From positions 62,001 through 126,000 of IMG/VR virus record IMGVR_UViG_3300013116_000108: a stretch of DNA of 64,000 nucleotides; one strand, 5' to 3'. The notes under the pieces were generated by a model. It worked only from the letters and a program-made list of their open reading frames with translations. It was not told the origin of the DNA and made no database searches. The translations under genes and the position numbers were made by a program. This document shows positions 3,089 to 58,557 of this stretch, in pieces. Position 1 is the first letter of the stretch; each line of letters opens with the position of its first letter.

Positions 3089-4243
3089 TTATTTTTTATT
3101 CTGTTTTAGCCAGTTTTGGGCTATTTTATTACGAGGCTCTGCTGTTAAAAACTTTCTTAAACTGCTTTCAACTTTTGTAAATGCTTCTGCTCTATTAGGA
3201 TCTTCCAAGCCGCCTGAATTGTCTATAACAATAAACCTATCTGCTCCAAATAGTTGTTGGAACTTCATTATATTTTCTTGTACTGCTCGCCACATTTGTT
3301 CTACTTTTAATATTGGCAATTTTCTAGGACGTTGTAAATTTCTTTCTTGTGCTACTGCTAATTTTGTATTAACAAATAACATCATTGTGCCATAACCTAA
3401 ATCAATCATTTCTTGTCTTATTTTTGCTGTCTTTTCAACATCACGACCAGTGCCGTCAATTACTACACCTAGTTTGCCGTCTAACCACCAGCCTTTTTGC
3501 TTCGCCATTAATTCTTTGCCTTGATCCCTAGTTGCTTGTCCGTCTGGGCTATAAATTTGTTCAGGGTCACCTACGTCCATGCCCTTTTTTGCCATTAAGT
3601 GTTCAAACATTTTATCTGAATCTATTACTTTTAATCCAAATTGTTTTAATACTTCTCGTGCTACATGAGATTTACCAGAACCAGGCCCGCCTGCCATAAA
3701 CACGGCTTTAAAAATATGTTTGTCTTGGGGGCCTTCTTCTATATTTAAACCAGTATCAACTAGTCTTTTTTTTTGAACAGTTTCAATCTGCTTATTGTAT
3801 TTGGCTCTAATTAAACTTGGCTTTAATCCAAGTTCTCTCGTCCTTATATCATCAACAGCGTTTTGGATTCTATATGCTATCTCTTTTGCTTTAGCATTGT
3901 CTGTTCCTTCAGCACTTTTAAATAACATTTCTACATACTCATCTATAGTAGCCAAGTATCCTGCTATATTGCCTTCGTTGTCTACTGAAACTTCTGATTC
4001 TATAGAAACTGTTTGTCCAGGTTTTGCTCCGCCTGGCTTTTTAAGTTTATTTTTATTATCGTGATTTAATTTAATAGATGTTTTACCACCACTTGAACTA
4101 ACATCAATGTTTGGATCTTTATCTAAATCCAAATTCATAGTTTGTCCTGGGCCTGTTTGTACAGATATCTTTTTACCATCCGGAGAAATTTTAGTAACTT
4201 TTCCTTGTTGTGGGTTTGCTTCTATTAATTTATACCAGCTCAT
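3089..4243 (-). CDS. Fusion protein with C-terminal P-loop kinase (zeta-toxin/AAA_33/PNK-like)
   Basis: KAVFMAGGPGSGKS Walker A, VIDSD, VVIDGTG, LAVAQERNLQRPR lid. Confidence 0.75.
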   Translation of the reverse strand: MSWYKLIEANPQQGKVTKISPDGKKISVQTGPGQTMNLDLDKDPNIDVSSSGGKTSIKLNHDNKNKLKKPGGAKPGQTVSIESEVSVDNEGNIAGYLATIDEYVEMLFKSAEGTDNAKAKEIAYRIQNAVDDIRTRELGLKPSLIRAKYNKQIETVQKKRLVDTGLNIEEGPQDKHIFKAVFMAGGPGSGKSHVAREVLKQFGLKVIDSDKMFEHLMAKKGMDVGDPEQIYSPDGQATRDQGKELMAKQKGWWLDGKLGVVIDGTGRDVEKTAKIRQEMIDLGYGTMMLFVNTKLAVAQERNLQRPRKLPILKVEQMWRAVQENIMKFQQLFGADRFIVIDNSGGLEDPNRAEAFTKVESSLRKFLTAEPRNKIAQNWLKQNKK

Positions 4244-4521
4244 TATCTCATTGCCTTATTCATTGATTGTACCCTGCGACTTGCTGGGTTAATACGTTTT
4301 GTTCTTCTAGATTTTAAAGCATTTCTTCTTTTATACTTTGCTTTAGTTATCATTAATTTAATACGTTTTTTAACGTTAGGTGCTTTATAACAAGCACCAG
4401 GTGTAGAGACAATTTTGCCTTTAAGCCTGCCTGTAGAACAGCGGTACTTACGGACAACTTTCTTGCCTGATCTGGCCCATGCCATTGTTGTTTCTAGTTG
4501 TGTAATTTCTTCGACTAGCAT
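4243..4521 (-). CDS. Small, very basic protein, probably virion-associated
   Basis: 92 aa, K/R-rich; starts MLVEEI; TAAATA-N5-ATG. Confidence 0.6.
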   Translation of the reverse strand: MLVEEITQLETTMAWARSGKKVVRKYRCSTGRLKGKIVSTPGACYKAPNVKKRIKLMITKAKYKRRNALKSRRTKRINPASRRVQSMNKAMR

Positions 4522-4542: not shown

Positions 4543-4806
4543 TTAATTAAGGATAATTAGTTGATAGGTCAAAAATGCCACTGCAGACACTAATGCTCCT
4601 ATTATACCAACTCCTATAGTCGTTACTTGTTTAGCACGACTTGTCTTATCTTTATACATAGCGTCACGTAACTCTACTAAAACTTCGTCCATTTTAGTCA
4701 TACGCTCGTCAATCGAGTCCAATTTCTCTTCCATTCTCTTATACCTTTCTGCACATAAATCAACGTGTGCCTCGAGGCTTTCTTTTTCAACGTCTAAAAC
4801 TGCCAT
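4543..4806 (-). CDS. Coiled-coil protein with one C-terminal TM helix (holin/XhlA-like architecture)
   Basis: EAHVDLCAERY heptads followed by IGVGIIGALVSAVAFLTYQLIIL. Confidence 0.5.
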   Translation of the reverse strand: MAVLDVEKESLEAHVDLCAERYKRMEEKLDSIDERMTKMDEVLVELRDAMYKDKTSRAKQVTTIGVGIIGALVSAVAFLTYQLIILN

Positions 4807-4844
4807 TGTGTCTTCTCACCTATGTATATCGTTAATTAGTGAGT

Positions 4845-4902
4845 TGCTACTATTACAATGCTATTGTGTTATGCCTATAAAGTTTGCCTATTGTGTTGCC
4901 TA
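4845..4902 (-). repeat. Five TAG(G)CA motifs with 12-14 nt period in the leader of the 4806 gene
   Basis: Plus-strand TGCTA at 4845 and 4859, TGCCTA at 4872, 4885 and 4897; CTATTGTGTT at 4861 and 4888. Confidence 0.7.
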
Positions 4903-4932: not shown

Positions 4933-4938
4933 TATTTA
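4933..4938 (-). promoter_or_regulatory. Late promoter TAAATA
   Basis: Motif at the far end of the 135-nt intergenic leader. Confidence 0.5.
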
Positions 4939-35166: not shown

Positions 35167-35428
35167 TTGATATTCCTAATATTGTTGATTCATACTTATA
35201 ATTATCAAAATAATCTTTTGCCTTTTTATATTTTGTAATTAATCTGTACAGATTTGTTTTGTTATTAATTCTATTATAGTCGTTACAAGATCTATTCATA
35301 TCTTCCATTAAAATGTTTAATGTAGAGTACATTGAACTTTTCTTTCGTGCTACAAAAAGATCATATGTTGTGTCTTTAATGCTATCCCATTCAGCAAACA
35401 ACTTTCTTGCTTTTTTATAGGCTAACAT
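35144..35428 (-). CDS. Hypothetical protein
   Basis: 94-aa ORF tiling with its neighbours. Confidence 0.45.
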   Translation of the reverse strand: MLAYKKARKLFAEWDSIKDTTYDLFVARKKSSMYSTLNILMEDMNRSCNDYNRINNKTNLYRLITKYKKAKDYFDNYKYESTILGISNGSTIKQ

Positions 35429-35885
35429 CTTCCATACCTGCTGTTCTTAAACGTGTTATATGTCCTAGTTGCCATTGTTTTGCTTCCAGTCCTTTCATAA
35501 TACCTAAGTATCTATTTCGTAAAAGTGCTACTTCATTTATTAACGTTTCAAAGTCAATTACTTCATCTTCACCGTCAACATACTTTTCAGCATCTCTTGT
35601 TGACAATGCTCTAGCATAACTTTCTAAATAATTTTTAAAATGTTTACGTCTGATTTTTCTTAATTGTATATTAAGAAAGTTTAGCACAGCCTCAATTTCT
35701 TGAAGTTCGCTAAACCTTACTTCTGTTTGTGCTGGCAACTCTTTAAGATTTGTTTCTATGTTGCCGTGAATATTTGATTCTTGACGTGCTGTTATTAATA
35801 CACCATTGTAGTAATCTAGGAAATCGGGTAAATTTCCTAGATTATTTACTACTTTAGAATACCAGTTTTGATTATTAATATTCAT
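35415..35885 (-). CDS. uvsY: Recombination mediator UvsY
   Basis: YLESYARALSTRDAEKYVDGE...LLRNRYLGIMKGLEAKQWQL; downstream of uvsX. Confidence 0.8.
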   Translation of the reverse strand: MNINNQNWYSKVVNNLGNLPDFLDYYNGVLITARQESNIHGNIETNLKELPAQTEVRFSELQEIEAVLNFLNIQLRKIRRKHFKNYLESYARALSTRDAEKYVDGEDEVIDFETLINEVALLRNRYLGIMKGLEAKQWQLGHITRLRTAGMEDVSL

Positions 35886-36133: not shown

Positions 36134-37222
36134 TTATTCGTTATCAAATTGATCCTCGGGAATTTCTTCTTCCGCACTACTTATATTATCATCTTTTGTA
36201 TTTTTTGCTCCGGAAATGATATCGTTCATTACAACCTGTAATCGTTCTCCGGTCCACTGCTTACGAAATTCTTTAATTTCTTCTCCAGTACTAGATGTAT
36301 ATTTGAGTTTATTGCCGTCTTTAACAACTACACCATTCTTTTCAAACATGTCAAGTAATCCACTATAAGGATCCATTCCTCTATCATAAGGAATTTTAAC
36401 TTGTACACCTTCAAAAGGTTTAGCATATCTTGTTTTCATAACTTTACAACCTGCTCTAATACCTCTTACATCACTAATTTTATTGCCTGCTTCATCTTCT
36501 TTTAGTTTCAATTTCTTCATTGCTACTACAATAGAACTAGCATAGATAAATCCTTGTCCTCCTGATATCTTATCATCTGGGTCAAACATATCTTGTGAAG
36601 CATAAGTGTGATTTGTACATACCATACCTACGTTATAAGCACCAATCATATTAACAGTATTACGAACAAGAGCCGTAAGTGCTTTAGGTTTTCTACCCAT
36701 ATCACCTTTCATATCGCCCTTATCAAACTGATCTACATCTGTTGGTGTTAATAACATACCTAATGAATCAATTACAAACATTACTTTTGTATCTGCCCTT
36801 TCTTCAGGCTCCATGGATTTGTAATCTTTCATAAATGTTGAAATAGTTTTTGCTACATCGTCAATCATGCTCATTGATAACTTTAAAAGTTTTTCAGGTG
36901 AAGTATCTACACCCAAAGCATGAAGCCATGTTTCATCTAAAGCATTCTCAGAGTCAATTAGTACTACAAAAATACCTTGCTCTTGAGCGTGTTTTACAAT
37001 ATTACCAGCCGCAAAATAACTCTTACCTGCTCCTGACTCTCCAGCGAACACGGTTACTTTGCCTAGTGGTACACCTTTATTAAAGTCTCCACTAATTAAA
37101 TAATTTAAACAGTAATTACCTGTTGAGACCCAATCTGTTGGATCGTGAAATCCAATTGACAATCCGTCAATTGATTTTGTTATATCTTTTCTAAACTTAC
37201 TTACGTCAAATGGTTTTGCCAT
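36134..37222 (-). CDS. uvsX: RecA-like recombinase UvsX
   Basis: AGESGAGKS, LIDSENA, FVIDSLGML, TNHTY, SGGQG. Confidence 0.92.
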   Translation of the reverse strand: MAKPFDVSKFRKDITKSIDGLSIGFHDPTDWVSTGNYCLNYLISGDFNKGVPLGKVTVFAGESGAGKSYFAAGNIVKHAQEQGIFVVLIDSENALDETWLHALGVDTSPEKLLKLSMSMIDDVAKTISTFMKDYKSMEPEERADTKVMFVIDSLGMLLTPTDVDQFDKGDMKGDMGRKPKALTALVRNTVNMIGAYNVGMVCTNHTYASQDMFDPDDKISGGQGFIYASSIVVAMKKLKLKEDEAGNKISDVRGIRAGCKVMKTRYAKPFEGVQVKIPYDRGMDPYSGLLDMFEKNGVVVKDGNKLKYTSSTGEEIKEFRKQWTGERLQVVMNDIISGAKNTKDDNISSAEEEIPEDQFDNE

Positions 37223-37243: not shown

Positions 37244-37273
37244 AAAAGTGTAACAGACCGAAGCCTGTTACAC
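37244..37273 (-). terminator. Rho-independent terminator after gp32
   Basis: GTGTAACAG-gcTTCGgt-CTGTTACAC followed by TTTT. Confidence 0.85.
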
Positions 37274-37287
37274 TGACTTACTAAGAT

Positions 37288-38295
37288 TTACTTCTGTTGA
37301 CGATCTCTAATCATTGCTAGAATATCATCTGCCTTTTTAGCAGAAGTTGTTTCAACAGGAGCCTCAGCCTTTGCTACTGGAGCCGGTGCTGGAGTACTAA
37401 CTTCTTCTGTTGTAGTTTCAGCAACTGGCTGTGTTGAAACAGCCGGAGCGGGAGACGGTGTTGCCGTAGTAGAAGTAGTTGTTTGTGTACTGCCTTGAGG
37501 AGCACTAACACCAGCCGGACGATAATAAGCACCAAATTTCTCGGTATCGTAAGGCTTGCCATCAACTGATTCCTCAAACATTTGTTTGATGATGTTAAGT
37601 TCAGTTTCTGACGGTTTCTTAGGTAAGAAGTCATTCAATGTAAACAACCCATGTGTGTCAATTGCTGTTTGTTCTTCAGCACTTAATGGAGTTTCTTTAC
37701 GAGCCCATTTAGATGTTGAATAATCAGCATAGCCACCTTTTGTGGTTTTTGTTACACGAAAATCTAGTCCAGCAGTTGAATCTGTTGGTAATTCGTCCAT
37801 TTCTGGATCCATTAAACTTGCTTTAATAATATTAAAGAGTTGTGGCCCCATAATAAAACGTCTGATTGGATTTTCTGGAGTTGAATCTTCAGTTAGAGGA
37901 TTTTCTCTAACAAATCCTTGGAAAACGTACGAACGTTTCTTCCAGTACTTACGACCCATGTCCTCTAGTGAGCTGTCTTTAAACCAAGGACGAACCTCAG
38001 TCAAGATTGGACATGAACCAACTGGTTCCCACATTTCCATACACGGAACTTGTACCGTACAAGGTTTGCTATTAACGTCGCCTTTAATACCTTGGAAAGG
38101 TAAACGAATCATTTGACGTTCTGCCCAGAAAAATGTATTACTAGAATCTCCATCAGGGAGAAACCTTAATGTAGTACTTTCGTTTTCTTGGATGTTCCAG
38201 TGAGGGAAGATAGCATTATCTCCTCCTGTGCTACTGCCTGATTGGCGTGTTTCTTGAGCTTGTAGCCTAGCTCGTATTTCCGCAAGTGATGCCAT
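37288..38295 (-). CDS. gp32: Single-stranded DNA-binding protein (T4 gp32-like)
   Basis: LRFLPD, CPIL, RKYWKKRSY, DFRVTK, YADYSTSKW, DDILAMIR tail. Confidence 0.9.
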   Translation of the reverse strand: MASLAEIRARLQAQETRQSGSSTGGDNAIFPHWNIQENESTTLRFLPDGDSSNTFFWAERQMIRLPFQGIKGDVNSKPCTVQVPCMEMWEPVGSCPILTEVRPWFKDSSLEDMGRKYWKKRSYVFQGFVRENPLTEDSTPENPIRRFIMGPQLFNIIKASLMDPEMDELPTDSTAGLDFRVTKTTKGGYADYSTSKWARKETPLSAEEQTAIDTHGLFTLNDFLPKKPSETELNIIKQMFEESVDGKPYDTEKFGAYYRPAGVSAPQGSTQTTTSTTATPSPAPAVSTQPVAETTTEEVSTPAPAPVAKAEAPVETTSAKKADDILAMIRDRQQK

Positions 38296-38355
38296 AATAT
38301 ATGCCTCCTATGTGCCTTTGTTAATTGCCTTGATAAAACATAATTCCAATTATGT
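38290..38355 (-). promoter_or_regulatory. gp32 leader: hairpin plus periodic AGGCA repeats
   Basis: ACATAAT-TGGA-ATTATGT hairpin (38338-38355); plus-strand TGCC at 38290, 38302, 38313 and 38326. Confidence 0.6.
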
Positions 38356-38366
38356 CTTAACATTTA

Positions 38367-38466
38367 TATTTATCACTCCTTGCTAAAAATGATAATAAAA
38401 ACTGGCTCCGTTGTTAAATTTTTATTTAACAAGTACATTATTACATAGAACCAGTGTGAAAGTCAA
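38367..38466 (-). promoter_or_regulatory. Tandem sigma70-like and late promoters of gp32
   Basis: TTGACT (38466-38461) with a weak -10 at 38443-38437; TAAATA at 38372-38367. Confidence 0.5.
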
Positions 38467-52154: not shown

Positions 52155-52664
52155 CTATTTATTATCTTTTGTGTCATTTTTGTTGAGTATTCTATCGAGT
52201 AATTCATTGCGACTTAATACTGTTGCTTCGCCATTTTCGGCACCATCTATTTTGCCCATATCCCTGTCAATCCTAGCATCAAGGGCCTTCTTTCGCAGTT
52301 GTAATTCAACCATTTTTAATTTTTTATCTATTTTTGCCTGCTTGGCATTAAGTTTAATTTGAAGCATTTTACTTGCTGTATCAAATATTTGTCCACTAAA
52401 CCTTGCTTCAACATTCATACCTAAATCCATTAAGTTATCAAATGTATCATCAGCCTTGGTGGCTATTTCGTCCATTTCTTTATCATTCGCTGTTAAATTT
52501 TCAACGCCTGCTAGAGCAGATTCAATATTATCTACTTCTTCTAATTCTTTTTCTACTTTATCAACTACTTCAATTGCCTTTGACGGCTCAACTTCTTCAG
52601 GGAGTTCTTCTGTACTATCGTCTAAAGGTGCGATATTAAGTAGTTCTTCTAATTTTTTTGTCAT
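52155..52664 (-). CDS. Probable terminase small subunit (gp16-like)
   Basis: Helical oligomerisation-type core, SRNELL tail, packaging-gene context. Confidence 0.55.
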   Translation of the reverse strand: MTKKLEELLNIAPLDDSTEELPEEVEPSKAIEVVDKVEKELEEVDNIESALAGVENLTANDKEMDEIATKADDTFDNLMDLGMNVEARFSGQIFDTASKMLQIKLNAKQAKIDKKLKMVELQLRKKALDARIDRDMGKIDGAENGEATVLSRNELLDRILNKNDTKDNK

Positions 52665-55350: not shown

Positions 55351-58300
55351 TTACCCGGATATAGAACCTGTGTTTTGGATTCTAACAGGTATGTAAATAA
55401 ACTCTACTGATTTAACAGGTTCAACAGCAACGTCTAGATATAATTCATTTCTGTCTATTCTTGCTGATGTGTTATTAGTTTCATCACATACTACCAAGTA
55501 ATCATATAAACCTCTTTTAGAAACTAAGTCGTTCATTAGTGATTCTACAACACCTTTGATTTCGTCCCTAGTTAACTTGTCATTTGGTTCAAATACAAAT
55601 GGTTTTGTAATTTCGCCTAGTCTTTCTCTGATATATGCTACAAGTCTTGCTACGTTGATTCTATCTAACGCTGAAGCAGAACCATGTCTAGTTTTGTTAC
55701 CAAAGTTAAGTATACCAACACCTGGGAAGAATGCGATTGGATTAATCTTATTCTCATATAAAGTATCTCTTAAAGATTCTTTAATACCAACTGTTTGGAA
55801 TTCACCAGTAGCACTATCAATGTGTCCTAACGCTGTAGCATTATCTACGCCACCTCGTCTTGTGCCTGCTGGAGCAAACCATGGAAAACTAGCATCATCT
55901 GAACGTAACATTGTTCTCAATGCCATGTGTGTTGGAGGAACAACAATTCCGTTACCATCTAAGTCTGTAGTTCTACCCGATGGATAAAACACACCTAAAT
56001 ATGTATCTGCTGTTACTAGTCCATTTTCATTGTTATCAATAGCAAGTTTTGTGTTATTAGCCCAATTTTGTATATCAGTACTATTTGGTGCTAGTCTCAT
56101 TGGAGCATCTCCAAGAACAAAGCCTGTATTTCGTCTTTCATTATTAAGTGCTACTAAGTTAGCCATTAGTTCTGGATATCCAGGAGCAACTAATAAGTTA
56201 AAGTTACGTTGTTCTTCACGTATCTCATCTGATGAAGTTACCGCTGACTTCATTGCGGAAACAATAGTATTACGCTGAGCATGTCTACCTACAAACGGAG
56301 CACCGTCATTTTGTATTCCTGATACAGTTACCCAAGCATTTGTTTCTGTTGGTAAAGTTTTACCTGGGAAGTCAGTAGCATTAAAGTACGCTTTCTTGTA
56401 TTCTTTAACGTTATTTGAGCTACGTCTTAAGTTAAATGCTAACATACCTCTTGGATACAATGCGGCACTTGGAGCATCAATATCTGTGTAGTCACTTGTT
56501 AACAATGTTTTAATTGGTGTCATAGTTGATGTTGTTACATCATCTGTAGCACTATCATGGAACCTAAAGTCAGCAAATAAAATACCATCTTCTGACGTTT
56601 GGTCTGTAGTATCAATTGCTACCCATTTATCTTCTGAAGCAACTGATTCCCATCTACTAATTTTAAAAGTATCTGGGTCAGAGGTGTCAATCCAAAGGTC
56701 GCCATATACAAGTGCTGTATTATCAGACTGTACTAGTGGCTCTGTTGCTGACACAATTGGTCCATCTGGTGAAGTGTTAGATAAGTTAAATCCTCTAGCA
56801 TCTGTAGTAACACCTTGGTATCCTTTCCAAGTAACACCATCATGTATCATAATATCCGCATCACTAACTGCGGCGTTAAACCATTTAGTTCCGTCTGCCG
56901 GATCTGCTGTTGGTTGTGTAGTACTTGCTGAGTAAGTGTAAGTTTGCCAATTAGATACAATTATATCTGAATTGTTGCCTGCTCTTGCTGTAGTTAAAGA
57001 AGCAGTAATACCAGCATCAACAACTGGAGTTCCAGTAGCATCTTTAAGAACAATAACACCACCTAAGTCGTGTGTTAATGTAATAGCATTTGTTGTAGTA
57101 TCTCTCGAAACTGACAAGTTAGCAATATTTGCCGCTGTTACACCACTTACAAAATCTTCGGCAGTTTTTGCTCCAGATCCTGGTATAGTAACTGTTACCG
57201 CTGATGTTAATGTTGCCGTTTTGTCTGACATTTGAATAGTAAATGTTTCACCGCCTGTAAATGCCGGACTTGCTGTACCTGTTACACTAGTAACACCTTT
57301 AGCAATTCTCTTGAAGAATTTATAACTTCCTCTACCATTATCTTCAGCGTCTTGCTTAACGTATATTGTATCAGCCGCTACATTAATTCCGCCACCTGCT
57401 TTATCTAAACCATAGTTTGCTGACTCGTCGTTAGCATATATTGGAGCCGCATTTGCTTCAAATAGTTTAGTATTAGCGTTATAAGTTTTTAGACTAAAGT
57501 CAGCACCTTTATTAGGTGTTGTTGTTTTAATCCAAACAGACCCTGTTGGTCTTGTATAAGTGTCTGCTGTTTTCCATTCCGGAATTGATGTGTGTTCTGC
57601 AAAATCAAATTTTGGAGACCAATATCTTCCAGCAGTTAATCCACAAACTGTGAGGATAGTTCCTGTACCATTTGCTATTAATACTGATCCAGTGTTGCCA
57701 CCGCCTCCGCCATCAGCAGTGGCATTAGCATAAATTTCTAATTTGTTATTAACAACTGCCGCTGAAACGCCTGCTTCGCCGGCACCTGAAATATCAGCCG
57801 CTAGTGATGTTGCTGAAGTACCTGAGGCTGTAACTGTAGTTCCGTTAATAACAATAGTGTGTCCAGCAACAATAGTTGGTGAACTTTCTGTTCCTGTTAC
57901 AGTTGGGTGTGATGTTTGCCAAGCAGGTGAACCTACGTGTACCCAAATATTTCCGCTGTTTTTGTAAAACAATGGATTTTTAGTGTTTGTAGCATCAATG
58001 GCATATTCGCCAATTGAACCATAAGAACTCTTAGGAACTGATGCTGAAATATCATTTGAGTCAGTAATTATTTTTGGTACTACGTTAGCAAACTTTTGTG
58101 TGGACTCGTTCCAAACATGAACTCCAAATAAAGTCTTGCTAATATCAAACCATGCCGTTCCTGCCGCAGGTGCCCCAGAAGGTCTACCTGAAGAAGTAGA
58201 TAGTTGACCTAAATCAACATCTGCCCTTGTTACATACGCTCTATTACTGACACCTAGTACGCTGTAGGCCGCCATAAGTCCGTATTCGTTAACTTCACTA

Positions 58301-58557
58301 CCGTGTAGTGCTGTTCCACTTGTATTTTTATGGAAAGTAGGCTCTCCATAAGTTGTTACTAATTCTCTTTGCGAACCTATTAAATAAGTCTTTCCCGCAT
58401 TTGCTTTTGTAGTACCTGCCGCTGTTCCTGTGCTAGTACCACTTGTTTTGTCTTGGGCTGTTGCGATAACAATTAGAGGAATCGTTCCAACTGCCGTTGG
58501 AGCGTATTGCGATTCGTCTGTAATTGTAACGTCAATACCTGGTGATATAAGTGCCAT
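55351..58557 (-). CDS. gp18: Contractile tail sheath protein (gp18-like)
   Basis: MALISPGIDV, PWFAPAGTRRG, INPI, DRINVARL, FVFEPND, AVEPVKSVEFIYIP. Confidence 0.95.
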   Translation of the reverse strand: MALISPGIDVTITDESQYAPTAVGTIPLIVIATAQDKTSGTSTGTAAGTTKANAGKTYLIGSQRELVTTYGEPTFHKNTSGTALHGSEVNEYGLMAAYSVLGVSNRAYVTRADVDLGQLSTSSGRPSGAPAAGTAWFDISKTLFGVHVWNESTQKFANVVPKIITDSNDISASVPKSSYGSIGEYAIDATNTKNPLFYKNSGNIWVHVGSPAWQTSHPTVTGTESSPTIVAGHTIVINGTTVTASGTSATSLAADISGAGEAGVSAAVVNNKLEIYANATADGGGGGNTGSVLIANGTGTILTVCGLTAGRYWSPKFDFAEHTSIPEWKTADTYTRPTGSVWIKTTTPNKGADFSLKTYNANTKLFEANAAPIYANDESANYGLDKAGGGINVAADTIYVKQDAEDNGRGSYKFFKRIAKGVTSVTGTASPAFTGGETFTIQMSDKTATLTSAVTVTIPGSGAKTAEDFVSGVTAANIANLSVSRDTTTNAITLTHDLGGVIVLKDATGTPVVDAGITASLTTARAGNNSDIIVSNWQTYTYSASTTQPTADPADGTKWFNAAVSDADIMIHDGVTWKGYQGVTTDARGFNLSNTSPDGPIVSATEPLVQSDNTALVYGDLWIDTSDPDTFKISRWESVASEDKWVAIDTTDQTSEDGILFADFRFHDSATDDVTTSTMTPIKTLLTSDYTDIDAPSAALYPRGMLAFNLRRSSNNVKEYKKAYFNATDFPGKTLPTETNAWVTVSGIQNDGAPFVGRHAQRNTIVSAMKSAVTSSDEIREEQRNFNLLVAPGYPELMANLVALNNERRNTGFVLGDAPMRLAPNSTDIQNWANNTKLAIDNNENGLVTADTYLGVFYPSGRTTDLDGNGIVVPPTHMALRTMLRSDDASFPWFAPAGTRRGGVDNATALGHIDSATGEFQTVGIKESLRDTLYENKINPIAFFPGVGILNFGNKTRHGSASALDRINVARLVAYIRERLGEITKPFVFEPNDKLTRDEIKGVVESLMNDLVSKRGLYDYLVVCDETNNTSARIDRNELYLDVAVEPVKSVEFIYIPVRIQNTGSISG

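What the first reader, a model, noticed from the sequence alone, without database searches (positions are those of the whole stretch)
38290..38372. gp32 leader with ~12-nt periodic GGCA repeats that run through the RBS and start codon
Seen in sequence: the transcript reads TAAATA...hairpin (ACATAAT-TGGA-ATTATGT)...AAGGCA-attaaca-AAGGCA-cat-AGGAGGCA-tatt-ATGGCA, giving GGCA spacings of 13, 11 and 12 nt. AGGCA also lies just before the uvsX start (37226, again followed by ATG GCA) and the small-terminase start (52672). Established: T4 gene 32 is autoregulated through a structured element plus a repetitive leader, and RegA/CsrA-type repressors bind short motifs at initiation regions. Inference: a GGCA-recognising translational operator defining a regulon.
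Basis: partly seen in the sequence, partly recalled or inferred. Interest (0 to 1): 0.65.

Follow-up and report, generated by a model that had tools for sequence, protein, structure and literature searches.

The report
AGGCA-repeat operator in gp32 mRNA leader
The mRNA leader of this jumbo phage's single-stranded-DNA-binding protein carries a stem-loop followed by three AGGCA repeats reaching the ribosome-binding site, a layout kept in nearly all of 30 distinct relatives and built like phage T4's gene 32 self-regulation site but with a different motif and an unknown binding protein.

Summary
On the minus strand, AGGCA lies at -35, -22 and -11 from the gp32 start codon (ATG at 38295). The third copy sits inside the Shine-Dalgarno sequence (SD) AGGAGGCA, and an 11-bp hairpin and a TAAATA promoter-like box lie upstream.

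Comparison with relatives settles it. In 30 non-redundant gp32 leaders (60-84% protein identity), AGGCA is the most enriched 5-mer: 71 seen against 3.1 expected, in 29 of 30 leaders, 71 sense to 1 antisense. The rest of the leader drifts, and the hairpin changes by compensatory substitutions.

The proposed regulon members fail. AGGCA before uvsX is kept in 1 of 23 relatives, and before the "terminase" gene in 2 of 39. True second targets exist:
- a 3-copy array at window 4872-4901, in the leader of an 87-aa XhlA-like membrane protein, kept in all 9 relatives found;
- in other relatives, a 115-aa early protein (p115) with two copies, 13 nt apart in 15 of 22 adjacent pairs.

No RegA, RegB or CsrA homologue and no Rfam family was found.

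Best reading: an RNA operator for protein-mediated translational control, T4 gene-32-like in layout. The binder is untested; gp32 itself or an unknown factor are the candidates. It is a new variant of a known kind.

The parts
37288..38295 (-). gp32-type single-stranded-DNA-binding protein gene, 335 aa. UvsX (36134-37222) and UvsY (35415-35885) lie downstream.
   Evidence: phrog_1192 at E 1e-68. The AlphaFold model matches the RB69 and T4 gp32 cores 2a1k and 1gpc, E 9e-8 to 9e-7, probability 1.0.
38302..38306 (-). AGGCA copy 3 at -11, inside the Shine-Dalgarno sequence AGGAGGCA (38309-38302).
   Evidence: In relatives the last copy lies at -9 to -14 in 13 of 29 gp32 leaders and in all 25 p115 leaders.
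38313..38317 (-). AGGCA copy 2 at -22.
38326..38330 (-). AGGCA copy 1 at -35, in the conserved context TATCAAGGCAA just 3' of the hairpin.
38290..38295 (-). Start codon plus codon 2 (ATGGCA), a possible fourth GGCA site.
   Evidence: Codon 2 is GCA in 27 of 29 Ala-bearing relatives, against 53% elsewhere in the same genes. Suggestive only.
38334..38359 (-). 5' stem-loop: 11-bp core stem with loop UGGA.
   Evidence: Three compensatory double changes against relative L002. An equivalent hairpin is found in 21 of 29 relatives at z < -2.
38367..38372 (-). TAAATA box, a proximal promoter-like element resembling the T4 late promoter. It would place the transcript start at the foot of the hairpin.
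   Evidence: Present in 18 of 30 leaders. It lies about 4 nt 5' of the hairpin in the leaders where it sits close. Genome-wide it is enriched in the sense direction at -75 to 0 of gene starts, 53 against 16 antisense, including the tail sheath gene. Its promoter function is inferred.
38437..38466 (-). Distal sigma-70-like promoter: TTGACT, 18-nt spacer, AATAAT, with a TG extended -10.
   Evidence: 10 of 12 matches. A consensus match only.
38401..38455 (-). Long stem followed by a U-run, a likely terminator of the upstream gene that overlaps the distal promoter.
   Evidence: z = -2.1. Inference.
37247..37274 (-). Intrinsic-terminator-like hairpin after gp32, so gp32 is probably monocistronic.
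4872..4901 (-). Second AGGCA array: three TAGGCA copies spaced 12 and 13 nt, 66-95 nt upstream of the ATG at 4806 and about 30 nt downstream of a TAAATA box (4938-4933).
   Evidence: Three copies are kept in all 9 relatives although the leader has diverged. Seen again in other fragments of this subclade.
4543..4806 (-). Gene served by the second array: an 87-aa protein with an N-terminal coiled coil and a C-terminal membrane helix, weakly XhlA/'hemolysin'-like.
   Evidence: phrog_1103 and phrog_1193 at E about 7e-5. Function not established.

Best explanation
The AGGCA repeats are recognition sites in a cis-acting RNA operator of the gp32 mRNA.

Layout. The proximal transcript probably starts at the foot of a 5' stem-loop. 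That stem-loop may serve as a stabiliser, a nucleation element, or both. It is followed by an A-rich, G-poor stretch with three AGGCA sites 11-13 nt apart. The last site lies inside the Shine-Dalgarno sequence, and a possible fourth lies at AUG-GCA.

Mechanism. A phage-encoded single-stranded-RNA-binding protein occupies these sites, probably as a dimer or cooperatively. This blocks 30S binding and sets the gp32 level after transcription. By analogy with T4, gp32 itself is the leading single candidate for the binder. An unidentified factor that also controls the other AGGCA-bearing leaders is about equally likely.

What is shown: the element, its conservation, its strand specificity, its position relative to the promoter box and the Shine-Dalgarno sequence, and its presence in a few other leaders.

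What is inferred: that it acts as RNA, that it is bound by a protein, and that the effect is repression.
For: - Enrichment. AGGCA is the top 5-mer in 30 non-redundant gp32 leaders: 71 seen against 3.1 expected, in 29 of 30.
- Orientation. 71 sense against 1 antisense, and 47 against 0 in p115 leaders.
- Motif identity. Upstream of -16, GG is followed by CA in 59 cases and by AG in none, so the copies are not Shine-Dalgarno look-alikes.
- Order of parts. The order promoter box, hairpin, repeats, Shine-Dalgarno sequence, ATG is kept while sequences drift.
- Hairpin. It is significant (median z -3.2) and shows compensatory changes.
- Long gaps. About half of the long gaps between copies hold a small hairpin, which fits recognition in RNA.
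- Position of the last copy. It overlaps the Shine-Dalgarno sequence in the window, in 13 of 29 gp32 leaders and in all 25 p115 leaders.
- Other targets. The same arrays sit in the leaders of an XhlA-like gene and of p115.
- Precedent. The T4 operator is a 5' folded element plus a region of 40 nt or more with UUAAA/UAAA repeats reaching the ribosome-binding site, and both parts are needed for repression by gp32 (PMC535899; PMC3014915).
- Wider pattern. More distant cultured relatives carry other short direct repeats in their gp32 leaders.
- The gene has the gp32 fold.
Against:
- Predicted unpaired probability of the motif positions (0.52) is not higher than that of the rest of the leader (0.60).
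- In the XhlA-like leader the array lies 66-95 nt from the ATG and does not touch the Shine-Dalgarno sequence. Simple occlusion cannot work there.
- In 16 of 29 gp32 leaders the last copy lies at -18 to -35.
- No RegA, RegB or CsrA homologue was found to act as binder.
- T4 gp32 is known to repress only its own mRNA, whereas this motif serves several genes.
- No pseudoknot was seen.
Confidence: 0.5

Rival explanations
1. Positive-acting leader cassette. The stem-loop protects the 5' end, and the AGGCA sites recruit the ribosome or a stabilising factor, so that a few genes needed in large amounts are translated strongly.
For: gp32 is needed in large amounts. p115 sits behind a consensus sigma-70 promoter. 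The 5'-terminal hairpin placement fits known mRNA stabilisers. The XhlA-like array lies far from the Shine-Dalgarno sequence.
Against: The upstream copies never look like Shine-Dalgarno sequences; no GGAG occurs upstream of -16. The complement UGCCU is not in the 16S 3' tail (my own knowledge, not tested here). Only about two leaders per genome carry arrays, and the tail sheath leader is not among them.
Confidence: 0.2
2. DNA-level operator. The direct repeats are sites for a phage DNA-binding protein that blocks or modulates transcription just downstream of the promoter.
For: Spacing of 11-13 bp is near one helical turn. The arrays always lie next to promoter-like boxes.
Against: Spacing ranges from 10 to 51 nt among relatives, with hairpins in several long gaps. 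Orientation is strictly sense. The arrays always lie downstream of the -10 box and reach the Shine-Dalgarno sequence. The hairpin shows compensatory changes typical of RNA.
Confidence: 0.1
3. Cleavage sites of a sequence-specific endoribonuclease that inactivates these mRNAs. This would be RegB-like: T4 RegB cuts GGAG in the Shine-Dalgarno sequences of early genes, helped by an A-rich 3' context.
For: The motif lies in or near the Shine-Dalgarno sequence and has an A-rich 3' flank. p115 is an early gene. RegB properties are given in PMC3014915.
Against: No RegB homologue is present in G000, G001 or G002. RegB sites are single, not arrays. gp32 is needed throughout infection.
Confidence: 0.07
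4. Chance, or a by-product of the Shine-Dalgarno sequence and of the Met-Ala start.
For: The third and fourth GGCA overlap the Shine-Dalgarno sequence and codons 1-2. The single copies before uvsX and the gene at 52155-52664 are indeed not conserved.
Against: 23-fold enrichment in 29 of 30 diverged leaders. Conservation of the second array.
Confidence: 0.02

Closest known systems
Phage T4/T2/RB69 gene 32 translational operator (autogenous repression by gp32)
   Same: It sits in the leader of the gene for a gp32-fold protein. It has a 5' folded element followed by a less structured A-rich stretch with a short repeated motif that reaches the ribosome-binding site (PMC535899).
   Different: The fold is a simple hairpin, not a pseudoknot. 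The motif is AGGCA, not UUAAA/UAAA, and is G/C-containing in a G-poor background. Copies are 10-16 nt apart. The same motif also serves other genes. Binding by gp32 is untested.
CsrA/RsmA-type repression (several GGA sites, one over the Shine-Dalgarno sequence, bridged by a dimer)
   Same: Two to four short sites in a 5' leader, the last often over the Shine-Dalgarno sequence. The spacing would suit a dimer.
   Different: The core is GGCA, not GGA. The sites lie in linear stretches, not hairpin loops. No CsrA gene is present in three phage genomes. The host is unknown.
T4 RegA translational repressor regulon
   Same: One factor would control several phage mRNAs, and perhaps its own, at their initiation regions.
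   Different: RegA sites are single, AU-rich and centred on the AUG. No RegA homologue is present.
T4 RegB endoribonuclease sites (GGAG in early Shine-Dalgarno sequences)
   Same: A GG-containing tetramer in or near the Shine-Dalgarno sequence with an A-rich 3' flank, found on early genes (p115).
   Different: These are arrays rather than single sites. No RegB homologue is present.
5'-terminal stem-loop mRNA stabilisers (for example the E. coli ompA leader)
   Same: The hairpin begins about 4 nt after the promoter box, that is, at the predicted 5' end.
   Different: This would explain only the hairpin, not the repeats.

Membership tests
T4-type gene 32 autoregulatory operator | Lies in the 5' leader of the gene for a gp32-family single-stranded-DNA-binding protein. 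| tested here: met
   phrog_1192 at E 1e-68. The fold matches 2a1k and 1gpc at probability 1.0. UvsX and UvsY lie next to it.
T4-type gene 32 autoregulatory operator | A 5' RNA pseudoknot as the nucleation site. | tested here: not met
   Only a simple hairpin is predicted in the window and in relatives. By eye, no loop-to-downstream complement. No Rfam match. RB49 is also reported to lack the pseudoknot (PMC535899).
T4-type gene 32 autoregulatory operator | A downstream, less structured stretch with short repeated elements that reaches the ribosome-binding site. | tested here: met
   Three AGGCA copies at -35, -22 and -11. The stretch between them is A 46%, G 11%. The motif differs from UUAAA.
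T4-type gene 32 autoregulatory operator | Bound and repressed by gp32 itself, and specific to its own mRNA. | not testable with these tools
The same motif in other leaders argues against specificity to the gp32 mRNA alone.
CsrA/RsmA target leaders | A GGA core, typically in hairpin loops, with a CsrA protein present. | tested here: not met
   The core is GGC(A/T) and lies in linear stretches. No PF02599 match in G000, G001 or G002. Host CsrA could not be examined.
RegA regulon | A RegA (PF01818) protein is encoded. | tested here: not met
   No match in G000 (56% complete), G001, or G002 (98% complete).
RegB targets | A RegB (PF10715) protein is encoded, and the cut motif is GGAG. | tested here: not met
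   No match. The motif here is GGCA.
Any Rfam family | A covariance-model match at or near the gathering score. | tested here: not met
   The best hits have E of 3.5 or more and lie far below gathering scores.

The most novel reading that the evidence does not exclude
AGGCA arrays mark a small post-transcriptional regulon of a large, uncultured aquatic jumbo-phage clade. Its members are gp32, an XhlA-like membrane protein and the early protein p115. A previously unknown sequence-specific single-stranded-RNA-binding regulator would control them. Candidates are the fold-orphan p115 acting on its own leader as well, or a gp32 that has gained sequence-specific RNA recognition.
Probability: 0.3. 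Interest if true: 0.7.

Novelty: new variant of a known kind. Interest (0 to 1): 0.6.

Why it matters
How gp32 tells its own mRNA from other RNA is still unresolved even for T4 (PMC535899). Here nature offers hundreds of diverged leaders with a crisp five-base motif that can be mutated, a simple hairpin, and at least two further target leaders. That makes the recognition rule directly testable by gel shift, toeprinting and reporter fusions. It also hints that short lineage-specific repeats are a general feature of gp32 leaders, as other motifs appear in Atu_ph07, GAP32 and Vibrio phage leaders. If the binder is not gp32, this is a new phage translational regulator with a defined site. The element is also a practical annotation mark for gp32 starts and leaders in metagenomic jumbo-phage contigs.

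Tried and rejected
uvsX keeps AGGCA in 1 of 23 relatives. The gene at 52155-52664 keeps it in 2 of 39, and that gene was not confirmed as a terminase.
- General enrichment of AGGCA in leaders or intergenic DNA of this genome: not found.
- Third cluster at genome 33478-33535: it lies inside a 359-aa coding region with copies in mixed frames, so it is taken as chance.
- 65-aa ORF 38166-38363 starting in the leader: no family hit, and its ATG is not conserved in relative L003. Rejected as a gene.
- Rfam scan: nothing.
- RegA, CsrA and RegB family searches in the window's genome and two relatives: nothing.
- p115 as an identifiable RNA-binding fold: the model has pLDDT 71, with no PDB match, no Pfam or PHROG family, an Atlas hit to "hypothetical protein" only, and no homologue in cultured phages.
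- p115 in the window's genome or in five fragments of its subclade: not found, but all are incomplete. Inconclusive.
- Motif accessibility by base-pair probabilities: uninformative.
- Exact-pattern scan of IMG/VR for three TAGGCA copies: mostly unrelated tandem repeats. The relevant hits were again gp32 and XhlA-like leaders.
- One consensus structure over the MAFFT alignment of 7 leaders: the hairpins of the more distant rows are out of register, so no pair-count test was run.
- Megablast against cultured phages: no near relative.

Full report
**What the window is.** The window is bases 62001-126000 of a 204,100-bp IMG/VR virus record estimated 56% complete. GC content is 35%. The ORF at 37288-38295 (minus strand, 335 aa) matches PHROG 1192, "single strand DNA binding protein", at E 1e-68. 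Its closest cultured relatives are the SSBs of jumbo phages: the PA5oct group at 58% identity, and Atu_ph07, GAP32 and the Rak2-like phages at 47-50%. An AlphaFold model built on 30 homologues has its best PDB matches in the RB69 and T4 gp32 cores (2a1k, 1gpc, 8gme), with E 9e-8 to 5e-5 and probability 1.0. UvsX and UvsY homologues follow it. Calling it "gp32" is justified.

**The observation.**
- TAAATA at 38372-38367.
- A stem-loop whose core RNAfold extends to 11 bp, 38359-38349 paired with 38344-38334, loop UGGA.
- AGGCA at 38330-38326, 38317-38313 and 38306-38302, which is -35, -22 and -11 from the ATG.
- The third copy inside AGGAGGCA.
- ATG at 38295-38293, followed by GCA.

GGCA spacings are 13, 11 and 12 as stated. 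Only the spelled spacer (TATT for TATATT) is off. An early note of mine gave 13/11/13 in error; note 3 corrects it.

**Is it more than chance?** Within the genome, clusters of three or more AGGCA number 3, against 0.3 expected. The strong test is comparative. A scan of IMG/VR found more than 600 gp32 relatives, of which 80 were fetched at 60-82% identity. After removing near-duplicate leaders, 30 remain. In their -100 to -1 regions:
- AGGCA is the most enriched 5-mer: 71 seen against 3.1 expected, in 29 of 30 leaders. TAGGCA and AGGCAA lead the 6-mers.
- Orientation is 71 sense to 1 antisense.
- Sixteen leaders have 3 copies, ten have 2, three have 1 and one has none. The one without AGGCA has AGGCG and AGGCT variants.
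- Upstream of -16, GG is followed by CA 59 times, by CT 7 times and by AG never. The copies are therefore a distinct GGC(A/T) motif and not Shine-Dalgarno look-alikes.
- Everything between the copies drifts freely.

**Architecture.** The order is constant: promoter box, about 4 nt, hairpin of 9-13 bp, 2-4 AGGCA copies, Shine-Dalgarno sequence, ATG.
- The hairpin region folds better than shuffles, with median z -3.2 and z below -2 in 21 of 29.
- Its sequence varies. Between the window and L002 (84% protein identity) three stem pairs change on both sides, C-G to U-A, U-A to C-G and A-U to G-C, with the loop unchanged.
- Start-to-start spacing of copies is mostly 10-16 nt. About half of the longer gaps contain a small hairpin.
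- The last copy overlaps the Shine-Dalgarno sequence, as AGGAGGCA or GAAAGGCA, in 13 of 29 leaders. In the others a separate Shine-Dalgarno sequence follows within 35 nt.
- Codon 2 is GCA in 27 of 29 Ala-bearing relatives, against 53% GCA elsewhere in the genes. AUGGCA may therefore be a weak extra site. This is suggestive only.

**Promoters (inferred).**
- TAAATA is enriched in the sense direction at -75 to 0 of gene starts in this genome, 53 occurrences against 16 antisense. It precedes the tail sheath gene among others. It resembles the T4 late -10 box TATAAATA (my own knowledge). A start about 6 nt downstream would put the hairpin at the very 5' end of the mRNA.
- Some relatives have a consensus sigma-70 promoter at the same place.
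- In the window a distal sigma-70-like promoter lies at 38466-38437. It overlaps a terminator-like stem of the upstream gene.
- A terminator-like hairpin follows gp32.

**The regulon claim.**
- In this genome AGGCA is not generally enriched in intergenic DNA: 0.82 per kb per strand, against 1.19 in coding sense.
- Only gp32 has two or more copies within 70 nt of a start.
- The single copy before uvsX is not conserved (1 of 23 relatives; the closest has AAGGTA). Nor is the one before the gene at 52155-52664 (2 of 39, both in upstream coding sequence).
- That gene matched only a PHROG of unknown function.

**True further targets.**
1. Window 4872-4901 (minus strand) holds three TAGGCA copies 12 and 13 nt apart, about 30 nt after a TAAATA box and 66-95 nt before the ATG of an 87-aa protein.
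   - The protein has a coiled coil and a C-terminal membrane helix, with weak XhlA/"hemolysin" PHROG hits.
   - All 9 relatives found keep three copies although the leader has diverged. A more distant homologue has four (L216).
   - In five further fragments of this subclade, the only non-coding arrays are again in gp32 and XhlA-like leaders.
   - This leader is not more structured than shuffles, z +0.9.
2. In relatives G001 and G002 (340 kb, 98% complete) a 115-aa early protein, called p115 here, sits behind a consensus TTGAC-17-TATAAT promoter, a hairpin and two AGGCA copies. The second copy is at the Shine-Dalgarno position.
   - Of 25 non-redundant p115 leaders, 20 have two copies, and 15 of the 22 adjacent spacings are 13 nt.
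   - p115 has no Pfam or PHROG family, no PDB fold match and no homologue in 50,697 cultured phage records.
   - It was not found in the part of the window's genome that is held.

**Who binds?** No RegA, CsrA or RegB homologue was found in the window's genome or in G001 and G002. No Rfam family matches, and no paper in the library mentions the motif in this setting.

The T4 operator is a 5' pseudoknot plus a less structured stretch of 40 nt or more with UUAAA/UAAA repeats reaching the ribosome-binding site. Both parts are needed for repression by gp32 (PMC535899; PMC3014915). The element here has the same layout with a different motif and a plain hairpin.

More distant cultured relatives lack AGGCA but carry other short direct repeats in their gp32 leaders:
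- AGCACAATT in Atu_ph07.
- GGTACAA in a Vibrio phage.
- AGAAGCAAA in GAP32.

gp32 is the only component common to all these lineages, which favours gp32 as binder. The use of the same motif on unrelated genes favours a separate regulator.

**Verdict.** The element is real, selected and strand-specific, and lies in the transcribed leader. The most likely function is protein-mediated control of translation initiation, at confidence about 0.5. gp32 itself and an unknown factor are about equally likely as binder. Rivals are:
- a positive expression cassette (0.2);
- a DNA-level operator (0.1);
- endonuclease sites (0.07);
- chance (0.02).

It is a new variant of a known kind; interest 0.6.

Noticed in passing
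whole genome; e.g. window 55351-58557 (tail sheath, box at -50), 52155-52664 (box at -30), 4933-4938: TAAATA, often as G/C-TAAATA-C, is enriched in the sense direction 25-75 nt upstream of gene starts (53 against 16 antisense). It looks like a T4-late-type promoter box of this phage.
   Followed up: partly
loci L336, L346, L369, L371, L396 and others (relatives of window 52155-52664): In many relatives TAAATA lies only 5-9 nt before the ATG. This would give leaderless or nearly leaderless mRNAs for this gene.
   Followed up: no
L095:16990-17337 (G002) and L130-L209: p115 is a highly conserved 103-143-aa early protein of this uncultured clade, with 31 invariant residues. It has no family, no PDB fold match and no cultured-phage homologue. 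Its leader carries two AGGCA copies, so it is a candidate autoregulated regulator.
   Followed up: partly
L112-L117 (PA5oct, Phosso, Atu_ph07, Vibrio 2.275.O, GAP32, XbC2), 100 nt upstream of gp32: Cultured relatives lack AGGCA but have other short direct repeats in the gp32 leader: AGCACAATT two to three times, GGTACAA twice, AGAAGCAAA twice, GGCTC twice. Lineage-specific repeats may be a general feature of gp32 leaders.
   Followed up: partly
window 4807-4860 (-): In the XhlA-like leader, CUCACU can pair with the Shine-Dalgarno-like AGGUGAG about 17 nt downstream. This is a possible Shine-Dalgarno-sequestering hairpin between the array and the start.
   Followed up: no
window 38401-38466 (-): A terminator-like long stem with a U-run after the upstream gene overlaps a sigma-70-like promoter with an extended -10. 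An inner perfect inverted repeat, GTTAAAT-AAAA-ATTTAAC, lies at 38430-38413.
   Followed up: partly
window 3089-4243 (-) and 4243-4521 (-): Downstream of the XhlA-like gene lie a 384-aa protein with a Zeta-toxin/AAA_33 kinase-like P-loop domain (PF06414, E 4e-13) and a very basic 92-aa protein with no family.
   Followed up: no
window 38166-38363 (-): A 65-aa ORF starts inside the gp32 leader and overlaps the gp32 start in another frame. It has no family hit and its ATG is not conserved in L003, so it is probably not a gene.
   Followed up: yes
window 38290-38292 (-) and relatives: Codon 2 of gp32 is GCA in 27 of 29 Ala-bearing non-redundant relatives, against 53% GCA among other Ala codons of the same genes.
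   Followed up: partly
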